Below are positions 21,001-50,847 of a stretch of 64,000 nt of DNA, piece after piece (positions within the stretch are counted from its first letter, which is position 1; the number at the start of each line of letters is the position of its first letter). The DNA comes from Macrostomum lignano (Eukaryota). The notes under the pieces are model-generated. The model was not told where the DNA came from, made no database searches, and worked only from the letters and a program-made list of their open reading frames with translations. The stretch spans positions 1 through 64,000 of the forward strand of contig NIVC01003031.1 in assembly GCA_002269645.1 (NCBI GenBank). Direction: 5' to 3'. A program made the position numbers and the translations under genes.

Positions 21001-22924
21001 ACAGGCACCAGCATCACAAGAAGCGCATGACGCCGTACTTTCACACATAGACAAATAGCAGTTGCAGAAGCTGCAAACCTTGACAAACAAACAATAAAAG
21101 GCGAAAACAAACAGCCAAATGAGTTGCAAGCAAACTTGACAAATGAGAGTCAAGTGAAGACAATAAATTCATGGCGTCATGAGCTTCTTGTGATGCTGGT
21201 GCCTGTCTATGGCTAGGACCAAACAAATTGAGCTTTTGGCGATCCAGATATATTATTCATCCATGCGCTATACACGGTTTTCTTTGAGAACTCATAGCGC
21301 TGAACGGGGTTTTGCTATAGACAGATTGTTGGGATTCCTTTCAAGGTCATGCTGCAGCTCGGGAGCGACTTTTAAGGTCTCATGAATTAGATACTTTCAG
21401 AGTCACGTGACTTGGTGTTTTTACCTTCAAGGTCAAGTGACTTCGGGGTTTTCAAGGTCATATGAAGGTCAAGGTCAGGTTTCTGAGTTCTGGGTGTTAA
21501 CAAAGGAAGACTATCTTGCATGGTTAAAGTTGCCTCACAGATAATCGTAGCTAACGGGGTCACACGAAATCGTTGGAAGCGGTTGAAAGCGGCGCGAACT
21601 GAAGGACTTCAAAATCTAGACTAAAGCTTCTGAGCCTACTGCGCTGCACTGGCAGACACAGTCAGTCATAAATCACCATAGCCGAAGCCAATAAGCTGGA
21701 CTATTGTTATTAATAAGCTTAATAAGCTATACGGTACGAACCGAACGGGGCATCCGTCAAGCGTCTTCCTGAACAGTGGAGCCTATAAGGACTGGTCGGA
21801 GACGCTAACCAAACCAATGTGATATAATTTATCGCGGAGTGATATTGAAATTCCGAACCATTGCGTATATACCAGTAGCCTATTAAGCGAAGTCTCTTCC
21901 TAGTCGCTAAACTATGAATAAAACAAACTAATAAAGCAGTCCATAGGCTAAACTGGTCTCAATCCTGCAGTTAAACGATTAGTCAGATCGAGAGACTTGT
22001 TGAGTATAGTTCCTGTTCCCAACCCTCCCAGCGCAAATGGTTCCACTGGCCACCGCATATCTGTCGCGTTGAAGTGTGCGAGAACGTAAGCTTCTAATTG
22101 GTAAAAAATTTACTATTGCAATGCTTATGCACCCCCTTCTACCCTGACCTGGTGCTGCCTCGATTTTAAGAGTCACTGCAGCCCGCAAGAGCTCAAGGGC
22201 TGCGGACTAACCCTGAGTGATTGAAATCTTGGCGACCCCACTCTCCCCACGAACCCGATTGGTGAAGCGACTTAGAATTTAAAACACGATAAAACATGAA
22301 TTTTTAAAAAGCAACTGTACCTATTAAAAGGCAAAGTCTTTCTGTTTTTTAACAGAAGCACTCAATTGCGACCTTTAACTGGGATGCTGCTTTTTTGTGC
22401 TTTGCGTTGCATCGAATCGAACCAGGGGTCGTGGCGCCAGAGTGGCGCGAACTGCTCTGCCCTATATTCTAGGGGCCTAGGTTGGCATAAGTGATTCCTC
22501 AGTTTCTCTCTATTAATCCCACTGGGGCTGAAAGAACGTGTAGGGAATGTTGATGCATACAAATGGACAACACTCCCAAACCAATGACCCCACTTGACTC
22601 TCCCCATCCGCAGGCGTCCTCGGCCTGTGGATCGGGTTCAGCATAGTGACCCTGTTCGAATTCGCCGAGCTGCTGATGGTGTGCGCGTCATACTACTGGT
22701 ACGAGCTGATCGGCAGCTTCACCAGGTCGAAGCGCAACCCCATGCGAATCCCCAAACTGCTGGCCGGCTCGTCCGGCCGGCCGGACCTGAGAGACGTTGA
22801 ACTGTTCATGAACGCTTCGATGTGCACCTCGCCGTCTGTTCTCAGCGCTCAGTCCAGGAGTACCGCAATGCTGGGCAGGAGCGGCAGCCGGCAAGATGGC
22901 CAACTGCTGCAGACTGCCAGCTGA
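18097..22924 (+). CDS. DEG/ENaC-superfamily amiloride-sensitive cation channel subunit (about 646 aa)
   Basis: Exon 1 18097-19726 (donor G|GTGCGT) and exon 2 22614-22924 (acceptor CCGCAG) join in frame. Features: N-terminal HG motif (TTAHGFSRI), TM1 (VWIGIVSCALLGAIIH), FPDLTFC, Cys-rich extracellular domain, pre-TM2/TM2 SYELVNLCSDMGGVLGLWIGFSIVTLFE. Confidence 0.95.
19781..19912. repeat. 16-bp minisatellite at the start of the DEG/ENaC intron
   Basis: About 8 copies of GTGGCTGTTTGGTGA(T/G). Confidence 0.9.
20942..21265. mobile_element. 324-bp MITE with 93-bp terminal inverted repeats and 8-bp TSD; P-element-like termini
   Basis: 20942-21034 is the reverse complement of 21173-21265 with 4 mismatches. 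CGCTATAC flanks both sides (20934-20941 and 21266-21273). Termini begin CATGGATGAATAA. Confidence 0.9.
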
Positions 22925-23027
22925 TTCGAATTTTTGCCTTGCGAAAATTTTTCATTGTCTGATGCGATATTGTGCAGCTGAGGGACTGGGAGGGACTTTA
23001 ACTTCTAATATCCGACTGAAACCTAGA

Positions 23028-24003
23028 ACTGGTAGCTTGTTACCCTGTTGCTTGTTACCTGGTAGCTTGTTACCTGGTAGCTTGTTACCTGGTAGCTTGT
23101 TACCTGGTAGCTTGTTACCTGGTAGCTTGTTACCTGGTAGCTTGTTACCTGGTAGCTTGTTACCTGGTAGCTTGTTACCTGGTAGCTTGTTACCTGGTAG
23201 CTTGTTACCTGGTAGCTTGTTACCTGGTAGCTTGTTACCTGGTAGCTTGTTACCTGGTAGCTTGTTACCTGGTAGCTTGTTACCTGGTAGCTTGTTACCT
23301 GGTAGCTTGTTACCTGGTAGCTTGTTACCTGGTAGCTTGTTACCTGGTAGCTTGTTACCTGGTAGCTTGTTACCTGGTAGCTTGTTACCTGGTAGCTTGT
23401 TACCTGGTAGCTTGTTACCTGGTAGCTTGTTACCTGGTAGCTTGTTACCTGGTAGCTTGTTACCTGGTAGCTTGTTACCTGGTAGCTTGTTACCTGGTAG
23501 CTTGTTACCTGGTAGCTTGTTACCTGGTAGCTTGTTACCTGGTAGCTTGTTACCTGGTAGCTTGTTACCTGGTAGCTTGTTACCTGGTAGCTTGTTACCT
23601 GGTAGCTTGTTACCTGGTAGCTTGTTACCTGGTAGCTTGTTACCTGGTAGCTTGTTACCTGGTAGCTTGTTACCTGGTAGCTTGTTACCTGGTAGCTTGT
23701 TACCTGGTAGCTTGTTACCTGGTAGCTTGTTACCTGGTAGCTTGTTACCTGGTAGCTTGTTACCTGGTAGCTTGTTACCTGGTAGCTTGTTACCTGGTAG
23801 CTTGTTACCTGGTAGCTTGTTACCTGGTAGCTTGTTACATGGTAGCTTGTTACCTGGTAGCTTGTTACCTGGTAGCTTGTTACCTGGTAGCTTGTTACCT
23901 GGTAGCTTGTTACCTGGTAGCTTGTTACCTGGTAGCTTGTTACCTGGTAGCTTGTTACCTGGTAGCTTGTTACCTGGTAGCTTGTTACCTGGTAGCTTGT
24001 TAC
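23028..24003. repeat. 15-bp minisatellite downstream of the DEG/ENaC stop
   Basis: About 65 nearly identical copies of GGTAGCTTGTTACCT. Confidence 0.99.
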
Positions 24004-24454
24004 CACATGGGAGCATGCAACCTAGGATCTTGTCCTGGTTGCCATTGATGGTACTTTGTTCCTAGAAACGGTAGAAACAGATCTCGGACGCACTCTACTT
24101 ACTCCACAAACTATCAAAGACAATCAATAATTAGCCAAATTTTGAAGTTTTACTGTACTAAGCTGATTGTGCCGTTCTTGTACTATGAGTTTTAGACGAA
24201 CTCCTTCGGGTATTGGTAAAGAGATTAAAATTTGCTGAATGACTCTAATCACTCTCCTCAACACTTCCTACTGTCTTCGCGGCTGATGAAATTGACCTTT
24301 TTATCTTTCATTTAGCTTTGACTTGGTAAAAATGTCATGGCGTCTGTCACGGCGCTGCAATCAATAAAAAATAAAACAAATGCAACTAAACTCTTGTTGC
24401 TTCCGTTGCAAAAATTTGCGATTGTCGATTGAAAGTCAAGAAAAAATGTAAGCC

Positions 24455-26790: not shown

Positions 26791-27559
26791 CCGCCTCTCG
26801 TTCCAGTTCTATCCGTTAACTACATGTACATTCTTCATGAACTCTGATTGTAAATTATCTATATTTTCTCTCTCTCTCAGAATCACAAATATTCAGGACC
26901 CAAGAGCTATTTGGCTCAGTCTAGCTACAGAGGAGAGTCAGAGACACCAGAAAATTAGTTCAGTTTTTTTACTAGTTAGGAATTTTTCGCAACTTTCCTA
27001 CCCTTCCAATATTGATTGAAATTCGATAGAGAGAAAAGAACACTATTTTGCGCCATTACTATTGGCTAGCAACAGCGCCAGACAGCTGCTAGACAGACAA
27101 TCGATTCTGGGACAGGGTCCCGCTGACAGATAAGTGGCAGGCCAGATAGGAAATGTCCGCAGGCACATTAGGCAGAACATGTAACAAACATTGATGAATA
27201 ACGGTGCTGCACTTTTCAAACAAATTAAACTGCATGTTCTCCACAAACAAGATGGATAACTATGTCTTTCGAGGTTGAAACCTAATTTGATATCTGGGAA
27301 AGAAAAGAAGCTCCCAGATTCTGCTCCAGAGTTCCATATATTTTTAAAGATTTCTTCCAATCATTTATCATGATTTTCGCATTTCGCATCTGCATTTACT
27401 GGTGGTTCACTTTGTTTTATGAGCTGAGATAATTGACTGATGAAGTAGAGAAAATTTCATGCTTATAAGTGAGAAAAGTACATTAGCAAGCTCCTTGAGA
27501 TCCTTGAGATGAGATCCTTGATGACTGATGACGTCCTTTTTGATCTGATATTTTATGAC

Positions 27560-29125
27560 CCGATCTTCCATGAGCAGATCCTCCATGATCGATGACGAGA
27601 CCGTCCATGATTGAAGACCAGATCCTCCATGATCGATGACCAGATCCTCCATGATTGATGACCAGATCCTCCATGATCGATGACGAGACCCTCCATGATC
27701 GATGACCAGATCCTCCATGATCGATGACCAGATCCTCCATGATCGATGACCAGATCCTCCATGATCGATGACGAGACCCTCCATGATCGATGACCAGATC
27801 CTCCATGATCGATGACCAGATCCTCCATGATCGATGACCAGATCCTCCATGATCGATGACCAGATCCTCCATGATCGATGACCAGATCCTCCATGATCGA
27901 TGACCAGATCCTCCATGATCGATGACGAGATCCTCCATGATCGATGACGAGATCCTCCATGATCGATGACCAGATCCTCCATGATCGATGACCAGATCCT
28001 CCATGATCGATGACCAGACCCTCCATGATCGATGACCAGATCCTCCATGATCGATGACCAGATCCTCCATGATCGATGACCAGATCCTCCATGATCGATG
28101 ACCAGATCCTCCGTGATCGATGACCAGATCCTCCATGATCGATGACCAGATCCTCCATGATCGATGACCAGATCCTCCATGATCGATGACCAGATCCTCC
28201 ATGATCGATGACCAGATCCTCCATGATCGATGACCAGATCCTCCATGATCGATGACCAGATCCTCCATGATCGATGACCAGATCCTCCATGATCGATGAC
28301 CAGATCCTCCATGATCGATGACCAGATCCTCCATGATCGATGACCAGATCCTCCATGATCGATGACCAGATCCTCCATGATCGATGACCAGATCCTCCAT
28401 GATCGATGACCAGATCCTCCATGATCGATGACCAGATCCTCCATGATCGATGACCAGATCCTCCATGATCGATGACCAGATCCTCCATGATCGATGACCA
28501 GTTCCTCCATGATCGATGACCAGATCCTCCATGATCGATGACCAGATCCTCCATGATCGATGACCAGATCCTCCGTGATCGATGACCAGATCCTCCATGA
28601 TCGATGACCAGATCCTCCGTGATCGATGACCAGATCCTCCATGATCGATGACCAGATCCTCCATGATCGATGACCAGATCCTCCATGATCGATGACCAGA
28701 TCCTCCATGATCGATGACCAGATCCTCCATGATCGATGACCAGATCCTCCATGATCGATGACCAGATCCTCCATGATCGATGACCAGATCCTCCATGATC
28801 GATGACCAGATCCTCCATGATCGATGACCAGATCCTCCATGATCTAGGTCCAGATTCTCCACGATTGACGACCAGACCAGATCCTCCATGACCAGATCCT
28901 CTATAACCAGATCTTTATGACCAGATCCTCCATGACCAGATCCTCCATGACAAGATCCTCTATAACCAGATCTTTATGACCAGATGCTCCTCGATGACCA
29001 AGTCTTTTATGACCTGATCCTCCATGATCAGGTTCTCCATGACTGATAAAAATCATATATGACCGTGTAGACCCTCCATACCAAGATCCTCTATGACCAG
29101 ATTCTTCATGACCGATGATCAGATC
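27560..29125. repeat. 22-bp minisatellite with a degenerate 3' tail
   Basis: About 58 copies of GATCCTCCATGATCGATGACCA to about 28845, then shorter degenerate units. Confidence 0.97.
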
Positions 29126-31504
29126 CTCCATAAGCAATGAAGCATTTAAATTCGTGACATAAATTTAGATAAGTCAAAATCTGGGATTTCAGTTTAACCT
29201 CATCAGCCAAGAGCACCCATGCAGCGGGTTAGTTTTGAATCAAGCCATGATCGACAGGATTTTATAAATAAGAAGATTTCCAGCAAGCCTTCCGTTCCAC
29301 AGTTTGTCCGCCTCGAGGACGCATGCAGGAGTGGCGGTCTCCGGGGAGTTGAGGGGAGAGGCGGATCCTCCTGTTGAGCCGAATGAAGGTTGGGGCTGGT
29401 TGCGAAGAGATCGACAGGGGATGCGCTTATATAGAGACCCCGCGATCGAAACCCTTAAAACCCCGGGGTTCTCAGCTCTGCCAGTTGCTCGGGCAGCTCG
29501 GGCAGTCCTTTGAGCACCTACGCCGCCGCTTGCTCAAGTTGGTACAGAGGAAATTTTCTTGGAGAACTGCTCAAGATGTCGGGTACGGGCCCGGGCATGT
29601 GATGATTAGTCTAAGAGTTCACAGTTCCGAAATTGTTCAAGTTGTCCGGGCGGAAATCGCTATAAATATAACTACATGTATAACCGAGTGGACCAGTTTC
29701 AAGTTAAGCAGATTTGGTCCCGGTTAGTGCACAGTTTAATAGGCTGCTAACTGTAATAGAAGGACGATACGCTCGATTTTCTTAGAAATGAGCTTCCTTA
29801 GAAATGCGCGATAAAAATCTGATTGCTCTCCGGCTCATTTCTAACAAAATTGACTAAAGTGTCTTTATACTGTTCATAGTGGCCAACCTGCACTCTCGAT
29901 CATGAAGTTCGCGTACAGGGAAGAAAAAAGTAATTAAAAAAGCATAGAAATCGATGCAATTCCATTGATTGAATCATTGGATGAATTCCACTTGTTGAAT
30001 CAACAGAGTCTGCTCAATAGAGCTGCAGCTCTGATAGAGTCCGATGGGAAACTGAGCAGAGGATATGCAGGAAGAGAATTGGCGATCGAAGGAGAAGAGC
30101 GGCTGCGGCAGTCTGAGACGGACCCGAGGTTGGGTACGTGGATCAAGGTTATCTTCAACAAAATCCTGGAGTGGCGTGTGCATGCCTGACGATTAGACAG
30201 TCAAGGCCGATGTGTGCACCCTGTGTGAGCGGTGTATGAGTGCGCGCCTGAGTACAGTATTGGCGCTCTTGTATGCATGTGCTCAGGGGAGTCAGGGAAT
30301 GGGCAGAACTGGCGCCGCCCACAAGCCTACTGAAATTATTATTTAGAGTCCAAAAATCTAACTTGACTGTCTTTGAATCAAAACGGAAGCTATTGAGACA
30401 AAGCTTGAGCTCAAGTATTAAGGTAAAGCGTTTCAAATTTGCATTGATAACCGCTCTAATATTATTGTTAAACGTTCTACTCAAAGTTGTTCATAACCTT
30501 AGCTATGCTTTGGATGTCTCTAAAACTGCAATGCCAGACTCCAGACTTCAGATCTCCTTCTGACTGGAATGGCAGACCAGAGATTCGTCACACAGAGGCT
30601 CACTGGCCGCCCTCATCGCACAAAGAGGCGCTTGCAGACAGGCCAAGTGCCATGAAAGATAAAACCTGATAGGAGGGAGAGGGGAGGGTTCAGCCAGTGC
30701 GGCTCTAGCTGCCGCCACTTCTCGTTAAGCAGAATGATTGAAAGCGGCTGTAGCATTATCGAGACAGACTCTGGCAGGGCTCTGAAGGCTGCAATTCTCC
30801 AAATTGGGAATAGAGTGAGGCCGAGTAAGTTCAGAAAAGGACAAACAAGTCTGGCGTCAAGAGGAATTCAGACTTTGGGGAAAAAAAGTTTTAAAGGCCT
30901 ATTTAAAAGCGAATTTTTAGCGCCTAATATTAGCTAGTTGGATCAATGCGATCAAATCCATAAATTACTTGAATACTTGATACCTTTTGAAGCCTTCATA
31001 GGCCTCATAAAGAGACTTATCAAAATATTACGATGGGTGACCACAACAAACTAGGCCAATGTACTAGTGTCTATTAAAGACTGTTAAAACATCCTCTGAG
31101 ACTGAGTATATTGAATGTTTTCTAATCCAGAACTTGAGCAAATAAAAAACTGACCCAGTTATTGCTGAAAAAACTGTCAAATAACGAGTCACTTCCACAC
31201 GGTCCATATACGAGGTTGTATGTACTTCACTATGAAAGGCATGCACATTGTGAACTATAAATAGAAACACGCGGGATACTTCTCTGCAATGCGATACTAC
31301 TTTCAGTAGCAATTCAAAATTTATTTATAGAGTTTAACAAAATAAACAGTATACCTCAAAATGTCTTTATCGACAAATATTTGCAGGAGAGCTGCGGGCA
31401 CCCTTCGGCGATATGGTCCCACAGCCAGCGCTGAGGCGATTCAGCCCATTCCACTGAGTCCTGAGCACATACAAGAGAAAGTTATTTAGAAATGCTAAAA
31501 TTTC

Positions 31505-31738
31505 CGTTTCCAGTCCAGGTGCTACCCAAGTTAAAAATCCTGTTTCCAGTCCAGGTGCTACCCAAGTTAAAAATCCTGTTTCCAGTCCAGGTGCTACCCA
31601 AGTTAAAAATCCTGTTTCCAGTCCAGGTGCTACCCAAGTTAAAAATCCTGTTTCCAGTCCAGGTGCTACCCAAGTTGAAAATCCTGATTCCAGTCCAGGT
31701 GCTACCCAAGTTAAAAATCCTGATTCCAGTCCAGGTGC
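31505..31738. repeat. 36-bp minisatellite downstream of HYI
   Basis: About 6.5 copies of TTCCAGTCCAGGTGCTACCCAAGTTAAAAATCCTGT. Confidence 0.95.
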
Positions 31739-31834: not shown

Positions 31835-33295
31835 TTAATGAGGCTGCAGGTAGCCCATCTCAATCAGCCAGTCGATGCCGGCCTCGGCACCGTCGCTCGG
31901 TCGGTACTCCAGTCCGACGCAGCCCGAGTAGCCGGCCTCACCAATCTGACGCAACACCGCGCCATAGTCGATATCGCCCGGTGCTCCGGGTTCTTGGCGA
32001 CCAGGTGCCTGCGCGATTTGCACGTGACCGGCCAGAGGCAGGTAGGCTGGCAGCGAGTCAAGCGAGCCCTCCAGCATCTGCAGGTGGAACAGGTCCAGCA
32101 GTAGGCGAAGGCCCGGCACGTCGTTAAGGATGGCCACCGCATCGGTGTACGAGTTCAGGTAATAATCGGCTATGTTGCTAATTGGCTCGATAACGCAGGT
32201 GACGCCGAGAGGCGCAAAAATTTGGACAGCTTCACGCAGACCGTCTACGTACGCGGCGCGGACCTCCGGACTCCGGACGGTCGTGCGGCCGGACATGACG
32301 TGAAGTGTCGGACAGGACAGAGCCGAGCACAGGTCGGCCGCGGCGGACAGGCCAGCGCGGAATTCTTCGCGTCTGCCGGAAGGAAAGTTCGAATTTTTGT
32401 TACAATAGTACATTTCGAACTTTTGATTTAAGATATTATGGTCGGTAGTGGCAGGCTGGTAGCCGTGTGTGCATTGGGGGATGGGTGGAGTTATTAGGGG
32501 CAGACTGAGAGCGTATGTACATTGGGGGATGGGTGGAGTTATTAGGGGCAGACTGAGAGCGTATGTACATTGGGGGATGGGTGGAGTTATTAGGGGCAGA
32601 CTGAGAGCGTATGTACATTGGGGGATGGGTGGGATTCTTAAGGGCAGACTGAGAGCGTGTGTACATTGGGGGATGGGTGGGATTCTTAAGGGCAGACTGA
32701 GAGCGTGTGTACATTGGGGGATGGGTGGGATTCTTAAGGGCAGACTGAGAGCGTGTGTACATTGGGGGATGGGTGGGATTCTTAAGGGCAGACTGAGAGC
32801 GTATGTACATTGGGGGATGGGTGGGATTCTTAGGGGCAGACTGAGAGCGTGTGCACATTGGAGGATGGGTGGGATTCTTAGGGGCAGACTGAGAGCGTGT
32901 GTACATTGGGGGATGGGTGGGATTCTTAGGGGCAGACTGAGAGCGTGTGCACATTGGGGGATGGGTGGGATTCTTAGGGGCAGACTGAGAGCGTGTGTAC
33001 ATTGGGGGATGGGTTGGGGTAGGCTAAGAATTGCCACTCCATTTCACCTATCAGGAAGGGCCGTTAAGCCAAGATCGCCGCTGGGCGGCCGGCAGGGCGG
33101 CGCATTGATGAGGGCGAACTGAAGTCCTCCAGCGCGCCTGCAGGCATCCGCTAGGCTGGCCGGGGTCTCGCCGCCGGCGTCCATCGCCTCCACGTAGCGA
33201 AAGCCGCGAGCCGCCGCGCGGCCCAGCCGCTCAACAATGCCAGGCCGGTCGGCGAACAACCAGCTGAGGTTGGCGGAGAGGCGCAGAGATGGAGC
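31835..33295 (-). CDS. HYI: Hydroxypyruvate isomerase (xylose isomerase-like TIM barrel); start codon not in the first visible exon
   Basis: Exons 33048-33295 (acceptor CTGCAG, donor AG|GTGAAA) and 31835-32372 (acceptor CGGCAG). Translation APSLRLSANLSWLF..GFRYVE..LINAP..GLTALPDRREEFRAGL..LHVMSG..VIEPI..LLLDLFHLQ..GHVQIAQAPGRQEPGAPGDIDY..GCVGLEYRP matches HYI motifs. TAA at 31835-31837. Confidence 0.93.
32470..33015. repeat. 48-bp minisatellite filling the HYI intron
   Basis: About 11 copies of ATTGGGGGATGGGTGGGATTCTTA(A/G)GGGCAGACTGAGAGCGTGTGTAC. Confidence 0.96.
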
Positions 33296-35323
33296 CTGCA
33301 GTTGAGCCAATTTTAAATGTAGAAAGAGCAATTGCCTTTTAGATTGCAATGTTCTGGCAGAGTTTATTTACCTATTATTGGATCTTTGTTATTAGGCAGG
33401 TACCAGTTCATATTTTATACTATAATAAATTGCTCATCAGAAAAATATGCTATTTGGTGCAGAAATTCTCATTGTTTGTACAACATAACTTTGAGATAAA
33501 CTTTTATATTGGAAAAATTATTATAATTTTATATTTAAAACTTAATATTAGAGACACTTTAGGTAAGGCAAAGCTTAGTCAAAGCATTAAATTAAATTTA
33601 ATTACAAATTAGTATTTTGACTTATTTTAATTAAATAGGAGCCTATCATTTCATTCATTTCTCATTTAAGATTTTAGTATTAATGAACATTAGAGACTTG
33701 AACAATATAGAATTATCATCTAAATTTATAGAAGATATATCTAAGAACAAACAAAAATAGATATCTCAACATTTCAGTAATTAAATTATCTATTATAAAT
33801 TCTTAGCTTCAATTATTTATTCAATATCAAACCTATAGCCTGTAATTGCATACAATAAGGAGAATTTTTACAGAGGCTAGTAGTTGGCTATAGGCCTAAA
33901 AATTTCAAAGCAAAGCTGAAAGCCAAATTGGAAAGCATTAAGTTTGAACACAAAATGATGAATTGAAAGTTTTTATTAGTTATGGAAAATATTTTTCTGA
34001 CTGTTCCAAGGCGCTTCTTTCAATTTCTCAAAGGGTTTCAAAGGGTTTTGTATTTAAAAAGAGAATTTGAAGATGTTATATACATTGTTGCAAAAATTTT
34101 GCTTTTAATTAGTTACTAAAAGCTTTCTAAAAGTTACTAAAAGTTTACTAGGAATGCTGTGTATCTAGGAATTCTGCCAATAATTAAAAAATGAACTCGT
34201 TAATCATGCCTGAAAAGTTCAGTTAAACTGGAAAAGTTAGCAGTTTTTTGTTTGAGATGTTTGACAAGACCGTGATCTGTTTCGTTGAAAATATTCTCTT
34301 TGAAATCGTCTGAGTACGAAAATTATAACAGAATTAAACGATTTACGACTCGTGAACTGGATGCACCGAAATAGAGTTAACGCGTCGATATCCAGATAGA
34401 CGCGAACAAATTGGGTATTTATAACATAGGGTTTATTAATCATTTAGGCTTTAATTGTGAGAATAATTAATTTGGTAGCCAGTATTTGAGATGCGACATA
34501 CACTTCAGCACTTAATCACTGTCTCTAGGCAAAATGTAAAGCAGCTTCCCGTAAGTCCCTGACACCAATGGCAATATACTCCTGCTCCTGTAGAAAAAAT
34601 TATTGAATCTGTTTCTTGACCGAAATCTTTCATCTTTATGATTTTGATTTTGATATAAATTGTATCGATCAAATCACTAATAAAATTCTTACACAAATAT
34701 GACTCTGTGCGACAGAAAACACAGGACGATCGCAATTTCCCAAGCGCGGTATAAATTGGTGCCTTACAAAACCGTCTGAAGTGCATTTCCTTATATCTAT
34801 ATATTTGATGCCGCGTAGGTATTGATCGATTAATATAGTAAAACACTCGCAAGACATATTATTATTGATTCATCACAAATGCGTCGTTTGCGCAGAATAT
34901 AACAGCTAGCCAAAATGAATGAATTAAGACAGACGACGAAGGAACGAAGGAAAAAGTATAATATCGACTTTTCCTTCCGCGCTACTTTCAGTACAATAAT
35001 TCAAAAGTAGAAAATACCAGCCTACGAAATTATTTCTAAAGCTAAAATGCGTGAGCTGTAATTATGACAGAAAGTTTTTTATGTCATTCTAAAATATTTG
35101 TGATTTGTACATGTGCATATCGAATAAGTTTTCAATATCACATGCACAACCACCAAAACAGAAATGCTTAAAAACTATAAGGTTCAATTCTTATTAATAA
35201 AACCATTACAGTACTGCCCATTCAATATAAGAAAACGAGTATGATTTATAGAGCAATAAAACTTCACAATACAGCTCAGATTCGATTCCAATATGAGATT
35301 TCGGTCAATTAAAAACTACAGAT

Positions 35324-49129
<13,806 letters not shown>

Positions 49130-50847
49130 TGCTGTGTATTGAAAGAGTCGATGAAAACCCGGCTGAACAATGCCTGTCTAAAAATACGTGCCCTAACAAG
49201 CGAATATGCAGCTTGTGTACTTGTACTCAAAGCTCAGATGGTCTGGGGAGCTATTAGCGTGGGGATTGAGCAGGTCGGGATGAATTGTCCCCATTGGCTG
49301 CATGGCTGACTTGCAGTCTGTGACGTTGCTAAATGCATCATAAATAATGAAGGTAGGACGCTAGCTCCGTATAAATTCGCTAGAGATCGGCTTTCGTTGT
49401 GAGACAGGAAGTTCACACGATACGAGTATTAAACACTACTAAGATTATTAACAACCTTACGAGCGGATGGACTTCCAAAAATCAAATGTTTTGTTTTGAC
49501 TTTTTCAGTTAAAAGTAAAGTTCGTTTGATTTGTTACTAACAGAACATTTTCGTTGATTATTTCAGCAAACAGGATAAATGGTAGCTGGGGTTTGCAAAG
49601 CATTGATATGGCCTGTCCCCCATGCATATTAATGATTATCTCTTAATTTGACTTGTAAATAGTTTGGCCATAGTTTCATACCAGGAGAATTTATCAATTG
49701 ACTTTACATAGGAAACATAGAGCTAATAGACATAGGTCTAAACCCTGTGGATTAGTCTATGGCTGTGCCAGAGTATATATAGTATTCTATGGTCTAAACC
49801 CTATGGATTAGTCTATGGCTGTGCCAGAGTATGTATAATATTCTTTGGTCTAAACTCACGCAGATTACTCTATGGCTCTGCCAAAAACGTAAGGCAATCT
49901 TATTGCCTGTGCGGCTCTTCAAGCAGACGGACACTACTGAATGTTGCCGAGTGCAAACAAAAAACCAATTACACTGTTCAAAGTCATGCAACAAACAAAT
50001 TAATAGTTAATAGCTCTAGGGGCAAAGCGGCACACGACCGCGACCTCGGGCGCGAGTATATTTGCCAATTCACTTCAATGATTGCATTGCTAGAGAGAAT
50101 AATAAGAATATAATAATTTATAGGCATGACTATGCAGTAAAGCATTATGATGCACATGTGGAGACGAAAGCAGTACGACAGGCAGACAGACAGGCAGGCA
50201 GACAGACATACAGATAGACAGACAGACAGGCAGGCAAACAGACGTACAGACAGACAACACTCTAAAAAGCAACAATGACAATCAAATCTCGCTAGATCAA
50301 AGCAGAGCCCAAAGCATCAATAATTCAAGAAGCTCTGCTAGAAGGTAGCTGAGAGAACAAAAAATGACAAGTATTTTTTGGCCATAATTAAAGAAAATAA
50401 CAAAGAGAAAAAAAATACTCGAATTTTCCAGATGACCGAACTGTCTTAGTCGATTTTTGAAAGCAGAGCATAACAAAATTAATTAGTAACTGTGGTGGAC
50501 AACCGGGGGCAGAAGAGCTTGCTAAATTAAGCGAATAAGGATCTGGCCAGCAAGCAAGAAGACCAAGCCAATTCAAAAGCACTCTAGCAGATGCAGGGGC
50601 AGAAAAACAGCTGCATCTTACATGTACAATTAATTAGCTCCTACTCAAGATCAGTTGCTTGTCTAATTTTTTTCAAACACCTCAGTAATTGTAAGCAATA
50701 AAATATAATTAGCCGATAAAGCACGCGGAAACGACTATAAGTATGAGAATAATTGGAAAAATTAGATGGCAAGAATTGCGGTACCGCTTTCGAAAAAATT
50801 GAGTATGCCCAATATTACTATGTTTTAGCATGATAACTGGCATAAAT

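What the first reader, a model, noticed from the sequence alone, without database searches (positions are those of the whole stretch)
33255..33375. HYI starts one codon after the expected Met, at a splice acceptor: start codon probably supplied in trans
Seen: the acceptor CTGCAG is followed in phase 0 by GCT CCA TCT CTG CGC CTC TCC GCC AAC (APSLRLSAN). The frame upstream is closed by TAA at 33368-33370 with no ATG, and the next in-frame ATG lies well past the conserved SANLSWLF motif. The nearest donor-like site (33371) is preceded by TAG. Established: human HYI begins MAPLRFSANLSWLF, and flatworm spliced leaders end in AUG usable as initiator. Inference: SL trans-splicing yields M-APSLRLSANLSWLF, so the gene would be untranslatable at full length without trans-splicing.
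Basis: partly seen in the sequence, partly recalled or inferred. Interest (0 to 1): 0.75.

Follow-up and report, generated by a model that had tools for sequence, protein, structure and literature searches.

The report
Flatworm HYI gene lacking own ATG
In the flatworm Macrostomum lignano the hydroxypyruvate isomerase gene begins exactly at a splice acceptor with codon 2 and has no start codon of its own, so its AUG most likely comes from the trans-spliced leader RNA, a mechanism already known in flatworms.

Summary
The gene lies on the minus strand. CTGCAG (33301-33296) is followed in phase 0 by GCT CCA TCT... = APSLRLSANLSWLF. An in-frame TAA sits 75 nt upstream with no ATG between, and the first in-frame genomic ATG is codon 38 (33184-33182).

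The window is identical to Macrostomum lignano scaffold NIVC01003031.1. This species' single 35-nt spliced leader ends in ATG, and its trans-splice acceptor motif [T/C]TNCAG matches CTGCAG.

The protein is collinear with HYI/YgbM from residue 2-3, so only the Met is missing. Two other genomic copies keep the same ATG-less architecture with intact, constrained coding sequence. All eight public protein models of this gene lack a Met or are marked partial. No convincing upstream ATG-bearing cis exon exists in the 2-kb spacer.

The transcript-based NCBI models start 30-33 nt inside exon 1, not at the acceptor.

The mechanism has been established for flatworms since Cheng et al. 2006, so this is a new member of a known kind. 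Its main use is to correct the annotation. Interest is modest.

The parts
33296..33301 (-). 3' splice acceptor CTGCAG (AG = 33297-33296). Proposed site of spliced-leader addition.
   Evidence: Sequence. Matches the M. lignano trans-splice acceptor motif [T/C]TNCAG (PMC8629364). Identical in the two other gene copies L002 and L003. G+C is 0.33 upstream and 0.70 downstream.
33048..33295 (-). HYI coding exon 1 (248 nt). It runs from codon 2 (GCT = Ala) to the split Arg codon 84 and ends in phase 2 at donor GATAG|GTGAAA. It contains no start codon before genomic codon 38.
   Evidence: Translation. 98-100% identical to M. lignano HYI models that begin APSLRL. Aligns to YgbM 1k77 from its residue 3.
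32373..33047 (-). Single cis intron (675 nt, GT..AG), mostly a 48-bp minisatellite of 11.5 copies at 32464-33014.
   Evidence: Splicing gives ...LPDRREEFRAGL..., collinear with homologues.
31835..32372 (-). HYI coding exon 2 (538 nt including stop TAA at 31837-31835).
   Evidence: Pfam AP_endonuc_2 matches residues 27-255 of the spliced product.
33368..33370 (-). In-frame TAA that closes the frame 75 nt upstream of the acceptor. There is no ATG in the 24 codons between.
   Evidence: In copies L002 and L003 an in-frame TAA lies 51 nt upstream, also with no ATG between.
33182..33184 (-). First in-frame genomic ATG (codon 38). Starting here would delete the N-terminal 37 genomic residues of the barrel, including the conserved RLSANLSWLF.
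33264..33265 (-). Internal AG (AACCTCAG|C) next to where the NCBI partial coding sequences start. Leader addition here would read MLVVRRPAWHC*, out of frame.
   Evidence: P0041 starts at SWLF; P0042 and P0043 start at WLF.
33296..35323 (-). 2,028-nt spacer with 30% G+C between the stop codon of the upstream KCNQ1-like gene and the HYI acceptor. It is the presumed outron or intergenic region and contains no credible ATG-bearing phase-0 exon.
35403..35404 (-). Cryptic donor ACG|GTGAAC inside the last coding exon of the upstream gene. One public gene model (A0A1I8JS92 = P0046) uses it to fuse that exon in frame to the HYI acceptor.

Best explanation
This is the Macrostomum lignano hydroxypyruvate isomerase (HYI) gene: two exons on the minus strand encoding a xylose-isomerase-like TIM barrel. 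Its genomic copy lacks codon 1. The most likely mechanism has three steps:
1. The pre-mRNA is cut at the acceptor CTGCAG| (33297-33296) and the upstream AT-rich outron is discarded.
2. The 35-nt spliced leader, which ends ...UUGCAUG, is joined to GCU at 33295.
3. The leader's terminal AUG then sits in phase 0 and initiates M-APSLRLSANLSWLF..., a 262-residue full-length enzyme.

Shown: the gene, the acceptor, the missing ATG, the frame, collinearity with orthologues, and conservation of this architecture in three genomic copies. Taken from the literature: the leader sequence and the acceptor motif in this species, and the ability of flatworm leader AUGs to initiate translation. Inferred: that this particular acceptor receives the leader and that ribosomes start on its AUG.
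For: 1. Species and leader. The window matches M. lignano Mlig_3_7 scaffold NIVC01003031.1 with 0 mismatches over 21,431 nt. The best protein hit is M. lignano HYI at 98% identity. The M. lignano leader is CGGTCTCTTACTGCGAAGACTCAATTTATTGCATG; 30% of its genes are trans-spliced; the acceptor motif is [T/C]TNCAG (PMC8629364). The window has CTGCAG.
2. Only this AG gives a full-length frame with the leader ATG.
3. The N-terminal region must be translated. RLSANLSWLF is the conserved start of the family from bacteria to vertebrates. Query residues 6-253 align to residues 3-254 of E. coli YgbM 1k77 (E = 3e-33). No in-frame ATG lies between the upstream TAA and codon 38.
4. Three genomic copies (L001 = window, L002, L003) keep the acceptor, an upstream in-frame stop and the absence of an ATG, despite a 24-nt indel in the outron. 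All three coding sequences are intact. Coding divergence is 6-9 of 786 positions, against 23-24 of 579-675 in the intron and 72-77 of 1804 upstream for the two comparisons that involve L003. The upstream region of L001 and L002 is nearly identical (13 of 1976).
5. All eight public protein models are Met-less or partial. None has an ATG-bearing upstream exon, even in the RNA-seq-guided annotation.
6. Cis candidates in the 2,028-nt spacer fail. Exact ATG|GT sites have poor donors. Candidates with acceptable donors are frameshifted or lost in L003.
7. Precedent. More than 40 S. mansoni cDNAs need the leader AUG (Cheng 2006, as cited in PMC9851317). Leader-AUG use is conserved in E. granulosus (PMC3510090). 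All reported flatworm leaders end in ATG (PMC12582326). The Macrostomum leader ATG is called a likely translation start codon (PMC10468722).
Against: - No read or cDNA joining the leader to GCTCCATCT could be reached.
- The three NCBI coding sequences, which derive from genome-guided transcripts, start 30 or 33 nt inside exon 1, not at the acceptor. The published pipeline therefore apparently did not place a leader site at 33296. In the same locus the upstream gene's partial coding sequence starts 1 nt after an AG.
- The Met-less UniProt models could come from protein-to-genome alignment rather than from transcripts, so they do not prove that the acceptor is used.
- One model (P0046) joins an upstream exon in frame to the same acceptor.
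- The -3 position before the leader AUG is U, which is not optimal. The +4 position is G.
Confidence: 0.78

Rival explanations
1. The acceptor at 33296 is used in cis. An upstream exon supplies the ATG: either an undetected 5' exon, or an exon of the KCNQ1-like gene 2 kb upstream as in model A0A1I8JS92. HYI would then be made with an N-terminal extension or as a fusion protein.
For: P0046 fuses ...[11 protein letters not shown] to APSLRL through the donor ACG|GTGAAC at 35404-35403. HYI's own intron also uses a GTGAA donor, so that donor type works here. A KCNQ exon ends in phase 0 at a GTAAGG donor (36433). Parasitic flatworms share 3' acceptors extensively between cis- and trans-splicing (PMC12582326).
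Against: P0046 itself has no Met, changes frame within its upstream part and reads through the HYI stop, so it looks like an error-prone prediction. A potassium-channel tail fused to a TIM-barrel enzyme has no counterpart among the 40 homologues, which start 4-8 residues before ANLS in most cases. Three RNA-seq-guided models contain no upstream exon. Candidates in the spacer are either not conserved or have poor donors.
Confidence: 0.08
2. The mature mRNA really starts about 30 nt inside exon 1: at a transcription start, or by leader addition at the internal AG 33265-33264. The leader AUG would then be out of frame. Only an N-terminally truncated product from codon 38, or none, would be made, meaning the gene is decaying or translationally silenced.
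For: NCBI partial coding sequences begin at SWLF (offset 30) or WLF (offset 33). The latter is what a transcript starting right after CTCAG| would give.
Against: The 5' starts implied for L001 and for L002/L003 differ and do not both fall on the AG. CCTCAG does not fit [T/C]TNCAG. RLSANLS, which lies upstream of that point, is conserved with distant homologues and so must be translated. All three copies have intact, constrained coding sequence. The neighbouring KCNQ1-like models are also fragmentary, so the transcript models here are incomplete.
Confidence: 0.07
3. Translation starts at a near-cognate codon in the 72 nt between the TAA and the exon, for example the CTG of CTGCAG or an upstream TTG, on an mRNA that keeps this stretch.
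For: In-frame TTG, CTG and ATA codons exist there, and the 24-nt indel between copies preserves the frame.
Against: The stretch is 33% G+C against 70% in the exon. It differs by an 8-codon indel and substitutions between copies that have identical exon starts. It has no counterpart in homologues. It also ends in a consensus acceptor.
Confidence: 0.04

Closest known systems
[quoted passage not shown]
   Same: The leader ends in AUG. The acceptor lies directly before codon 2. The leader AUG is in frame, and no genomic AUG gives the orthologue-length N-terminus.
   Different: The species is a free-living macrostomorph, not a neodermatan parasite. The gene, HYI, is not reported as a case in any paper I could search. 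Here the junction and the initiation are inferred, not demonstrated.
Echinococcus granulosus SL-bearing transcripts (PMC3510090)
   Same: Many cDNAs are full length only if the leader ATG is the start. Several need it to match the conserved N-termini of orthologues, which is the same argument used here.
   Different: Those cases rest on sequenced SL-cDNAs. This one rests on genomic sequence plus the published leader sequence and acceptor motif.
slORFs: open reading frames created by spliced-leader addition (slORFfinder, PMC9851317)
   Same: The start codon is donated by the leader to the recipient mRNA.
   Different: slORFs in nematodes, Oikopleura and trypanosomes often use near-cognate NUG codons and create new or alternative reading frames. 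Here the leader AUG would restore the canonical, ancestral reading frame of a conserved enzyme.
Downstream genes of M. lignano operons resolved by leader trans-splicing (PMC8629364)
   Same: There is a same-strand upstream gene (KCNQ1-like) and an acceptor of trans-splice type at the 5' end of the downstream gene.
   Different: The distance from the upstream stop codon to the acceptor is 2,028 nt, with no repeats detected within the window. The published operon criterion is under 1 kb after repeat subtraction, and the typical spacing is about 100 bp. Operon membership is therefore unproven and not needed for the mechanism.

Membership tests
Flatworm mRNAs initiated on the spliced-leader AUG (Cheng et al. 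2006 class) | The organism has an SL RNA whose leader exon ends in AUG | tested here: met
   The window is M. lignano. The published 35-nt leader ends ...TTGCATG (PMC8629364). No SL RNA gene lies in the window, as expected for a factor supplied in trans.
Flatworm mRNAs initiated on the spliced-leader AUG (Cheng et al. 2006 class) | [quoted passage not shown] | tested here: met
   CTGCAG| at 33301-33296 fits [T/C]TNCAG. It is conserved in three copies. There is a sharp G+C step at the junction.
Flatworm mRNAs initiated on the spliced-leader AUG (Cheng et al. 2006 class) | The leader AUG is in frame with the main reading frame and gives an N-terminus matching orthologues, with no nearby genomic AUG alternative | tested here: met
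   A phase-0 junction gives MAPSLRLSANLSWLF. Homologue N-termini are, and the 1k77 alignment. The next genomic ATG is at codon 38, with a TAA upstream.
Flatworm mRNAs initiated on the spliced-leader AUG (Cheng et al. 2006 class) | No competing upstream cis donor or exon supplying the start | tested here: inconclusive
   No conserved candidate with a good donor lies in the 2,028-nt spacer. Donors in the upstream KCNQ1-like gene, including the one used by model P0046, cannot be excluded from DNA alone.
Flatworm mRNAs initiated on the spliced-leader AUG (Cheng et al. 2006 class) | cDNA or RNA-seq reads with the leader joined to this exon | not testable with these tools
   No M. lignano transcript data were reachable. 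The NCBI transcript-derived coding sequences start 30-33 nt inside the exon.
Flatworm mRNAs initiated on the spliced-leader AUG (Cheng et al. 2006 class) | Translation initiation on the leader AUG (ribosome profiling, reporter or N-terminal peptide) | not testable with these tools
   This needs an experiment.
Hydroxypyruvate isomerase (HYI/Hyi/YgbM; xylose-isomerase-like TIM barrel, Pfam PF01261) | Significant full-length match to the family model and to solved members | tested here: met
   PF01261 E = 1.1e-32, 114 bits against a cut-off of 31.1, residues 27-255. 1k77 YgbM E = 3e-33 and 3ngf E = 1.9e-32 over residues 6-253. Named HYI homologues are 35-42% identical over 94-97% of the query.
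Hydroxypyruvate isomerase (HYI/Hyi/YgbM; xylose-isomerase-like TIM barrel, Pfam PF01261) | Hydroxypyruvate-to-tartronate-semialdehyde isomerase activity | not tested
   This needs an enzyme assay. The name rests on homology only.
M. lignano operon (polycistron resolved by the spliced leader) | Same-strand upstream gene less than 1 kb away after repeat subtraction (criterion of PMC8629364) | tested here: inconclusive
   The upstream KCNQ1-like coding sequence ends 2,028 nt before the acceptor, and no repeat was found within the window. The poly(A) site of the upstream gene is unknown, so the true gap is not known.

The most novel reading that the evidence does not exclude
Two alternative leader-addition sites 32 nt apart could act as a translational switch. 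Addition at 33296 puts the leader AUG in frame and yields full-length HYI. Addition at the internal AG (33265-33264), which is where the transcript-based NCBI models start, puts the same AUG out of frame. That gives an 11-codon dead-end reading frame (MLVVRRPAWHC*) and silences the enzyme. Expression would then be set by acceptor choice rather than by transcription.
Probability: 0.08. Interest if true: 0.5.

Novelty: new member of a known kind. Interest (0 to 1): 0.3.

Why it matters
- **Annotation.** All eight public protein models of this gene are Met-less or marked partial. The reason appears to be biological (a start codon supplied in trans), not a poor assembly. The correct product would be the 262-residue MAPSLRL...QPH.
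- **Evolution.** It would be a clean case, outside the parasitic Neodermata, of a conserved metabolic enzyme that depends on the leader AUG. It is kept in three gene copies of a polyploid genome. That would fit the idea that initiator use of the leader AUG is old in rhabditophoran flatworms.
- **Practical use.** M. lignano is the flatworm with stable transgenesis, so this outron and exon 1 would make a convenient reporter of trans-splicing-dependent translation.
- **Limits.** None of this changes current understanding of the mechanism.

Tried and rejected
- **Direct transcript evidence.** I searched papers and supplements for Mlig001525, Mlig031072, HYI and hydroxypyruvate and found nothing. 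The 90% cluster of this protein holds only UniRef and NCBI genome-derived models, none from read assemblies. Wasik et al. 2015 is not held, so I could not check how the Met-less UniProt models were made.
- **Leader gene nearby.** There is no match to the leader or its 3' half in the window or in the paralogous loci, and no Rfam family hit. This is expected and not informative.
- **Upstream ATG|GT exon ends.** Five sites lie within 8 kb, all with poor donors (GTTCGA, GTGCGG, GTTTTG, GTGACT, GTTTTA), and four of them lie inside the KCNQ1-like gene. Rejected.
- **Open reading frame MSCECFTILIDQ... (34857 to the GTAAG donors at 34767 and 34692).** It is frameshifted by a 2-nt deletion in copy L003. 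Rejected as a coding exon.
- **All 16 phase-0 GT sites with an in-frame ATG in the spacer.** Those with at least 5 of 9 consensus matches are not conserved in L003. Those conserved in all copies have 4 or fewer matches.
- **Naming the upstream gene from the database.** A protein search with its C-terminal reading frame returned nothing, which cost one capped search. Pfam on short fragments was also empty. I identified the gene from concatenated N-terminal exons instead.
- **Paralogue comparison as a test of outron versus exon.** The copies are only 1-5% diverged and mosaic, so power is limited.
Full report
**What is in the sequence**

The feature is on the minus strand.
- The hexamer CTGCAG occupies 33301-33296.
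- It is followed in phase 0 by GCT CCA TCT CTG CGC CTC TCC GCC AAC CTC AGC TGG TTG TTC, which reads APSLRLSANLSWLF.
- Reading the same frame backwards gives 24 sense codons with no ATG (INSARTLQSKRQLLFLHLKLAQLQ), then TAA at 33370-33368.
- The donor-like TAG|GTAAAT has its GT at 33371-33370.
- The first in-frame genomic ATG is at 33184-33182, which is codon 38.

**Gene structure**

- Exon 1 is 33295-33048 and ends at the donor GATAG|GTGAAA.
- A 675-nt intron (33047-32373) follows. It is mostly a 48-bp minisatellite.
- Exon 2 is 32372-31835, after the acceptor TTCCGGCAG|, and ends in TAA.
- With a Met added, the spliced product is 262 residues.
- It matches Pfam PF01261 (E = 1.1e-32).
- It matches the solved family members E. 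coli YgbM (1k77, E = 3e-33) and 3ngf.

**Organism**

- The best database hit (98% identity) is 'Putative hydroxypyruvate isomerase', Macrostomum lignano A0A1I8H9T6.
- Fetching the DNA that encodes the NCBI protein PAA53743.1 returned scaffold NIVC01003031.1, positions 21835-43265, of assembly GCA_002269645.1 (Mlig_3_7).
- That stretch is identical to the window at the same coordinates, with 0 mismatches in 21,431 nt.
- The window is therefore M. lignano, a free-living flatworm.

**Spliced leader in this species**

- Ustyantsev & Berezikov 2021 (PMC8629364) report a single 35-nt leader, CGGTCTCTTACTGCGAAGACTCAATTTATTGCATG.
- About 30% of genes are trans-spliced.
- [T/C]TNCAG is the top enriched motif exactly at trans-splice acceptors. 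The window's CTGCAG fits it.
- That motif occurs at 0.0026 per nt in the window, so landing on the codon-1/codon-2 boundary by chance is unlikely.
- G+C steps from 0.33 to 0.70 at the same base.
- Among all AG sites from -80 to +130, only this one puts a leader-derived ATG in frame with a full-length product.

**Why the N-terminal segment must be translated**

- Residues 6-253 align with residues 3-254 of YgbM.
- RLSANLSWLF is shared with bacterial and vertebrate homologues.
- Most homologues start 4-8 residues before the ANLS motif. Naked mole-rat HYI starts MAPLRFS|ANLS.
- The window supplies seven residues before ANLS, so exactly one Met is missing.
- Such conservation in a lineage this distant means the segment is read as protein.
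- A start at codon 38 would delete the N-terminal 37 genomic residues, including that conserved motif.

**Paralogous copies**

Two further loci were fetched, L002 (NIVC01001051.1) and L003 (NIVC01002811.1).
- Both keep the same acceptor and exon start.
- Both have an in-frame TAA upstream, 51 nt away because of a 24-nt indel in the outron, and no ATG between.
- All three coding sequences are intact.
- They differ at 6-9 of 786 positions. The intron differs at 23-24 of 579-675 positions. The upstream 2 kb differs at 72-77 of 1804 positions for the comparisons with L003, while L001 and L002 are almost identical upstream (13 of 1976).
- The gene therefore appears to be maintained, and the missing ATG is not an assembly error.

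**Public annotation**

- All eight members of the 90% cluster lack a Met.
- Four UniProt models begin APSLRL.
- Three NCBI models are 'partial' and begin SWLF or WLF.
- One UniProt model (A0A1I8JS92) is a fusion, discussed below.
- The Mlig_3_7 pipeline trimmed leader sequences from reads and transcripts before mapping, then ran TransDecoder (PMC5730564). That would yield 5'-partial reading frames for genes that depend on the leader AUG.
- Wiberg et al. [quoted passage not shown] They did not trim it, in order to avoid annotation problems.

**Search for a cis alternative**

- Within 8 kb upstream there are five exact ATG|GT sites. All have poor donors, and four lie inside the upstream gene.
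- In the 2,028-nt spacer (30% G+C), 16 GT sites are preceded by an open in-frame ATG.
- Those with acceptable donors are broken in L003. An example is MSCECF... at 34857, which carries a 2-nt deletion there.
- Those conserved in all copies have weak donors.
- The fused model P0046 uses ACG|GTGAAC (35404-35403) in the last exon of the upstream gene. The model has no Met, shifts frame and reads through the HYI stop. I regard it as a prediction artefact or a minor cis-splice from a read-through precursor.
- It cannot be excluded without RNA data.

**Unresolved point**

- The NCBI coding sequences start at offsets 30 (L001) and 33 (L002, L003) inside exon 1, next to an internal AG (33265-33264).
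- Leader addition there would give MLVVRRPAWHC*.
- The starts implied for the copies differ, and that site does not fit the acceptor motif.
- The adjacent KCNQ1-like models are also fragmentary. Incomplete 5' assembly of a weakly expressed, triplicated gene is a plausible reason for the internal starts, although I did not test it.
- It does mean that the published pipeline gives no positive evidence for a leader site at 33296.

**Comparison with what is known**

- Use of the flatworm leader's 3'-terminal AUG as initiator Met was shown by Cheng et al. 2006. [quoted passage not shown]
- It was extended to E. granulosus, where its use is conserved among orthologues (PMC3510090).
- All reported flatworm leaders end in ATG (PMC12582326).
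- The present case fits that class on every feature testable from DNA. The two defining experimental features, a leader-exon junction in RNA and initiation on the leader AUG, could not be tested here.

**Verdict**

- The mechanism is already known, and HYI of M. lignano is a new member of that class.
- The value lies in correcting the annotation and in providing a handy reporter and an evolutionary data point.
- Interest is 0.3.

Noticed in passing
window 35324-49177 (-): The gene upstream of HYI on the same strand is a KCNQ1-like (Kv7) potassium channel. Concatenated exon translations match KCNQ1 structures at E = 1.3e-62 and Pfam Ion_trans. Its public models are fragments: 375 aa in L001, 456 aa in L002 starting at the Met inside the S4 motif [16 protein letters not shown], and none called in L003.
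   Followed up: partly
window 39430-39433 (-) (= L001 3833-3836): The partial coding sequence of the KCNQ1-like model starts 1 nt after an acceptor (AACCCAG|G) in the middle of the channel gene. This may be an internal leader-addition site whose AUG would be out of frame with the annotated frame, or simply a truncated transcript model.
   Followed up: no
UniProt A0A1I8JS92 (P0046); window 35403-35404 to 33296 (-): A public gene model fuses the C-terminal exon of the potassium channel in frame to HYI through the cryptic donor ACG|GTGAAC. It also reads through the HYI stop codon in a shifted frame. It is probably an artefact of the older, indel-rich assembly.
   Followed up: partly
window 22900-24070, 27400-29140, 31506-31738, 32464-33014, 35856-36074, 37054-39235, 41360-42290: The region has an extraordinary density of minisatellites in introns and spacers: 22-bp x 41, 36-bp x 6.5, 48-bp x 11.5 (inside the HYI intron), 31-bp x 7, and 24-bp x 30. 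Long repeat arrays create spurious open reading frames of 300-700 codons on both strands. Copy number differs between the gene copies: the intron alignments show 48-152-nt gaps.
   Followed up: no
L001/L002/L003, upstream 2.6 kb to 3' flank of HYI: The three HYI loci are mosaics. L001 and L002 are about 100% identical over roughly 1.8 kb upstream (from about -2.36 to -0.4 kb relative to the acceptor) but differ in exon 1 and the intron. L002 and L003 share the 24-nt outron deletion. This suggests recombination or gene conversion between homeologous copies of this polyploid genome. L002 ends in TGA where the other two end in TAA.
   Followed up: partly
window ~21835-22924 (+) (= L001 20342-21431, -): A gene for an amiloride-sensitive sodium channel (Pfam ASC, PF00858, 646 aa) converges on HYI from the opposite strand. 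It is also present next to HYI in L003.
   Followed up: no
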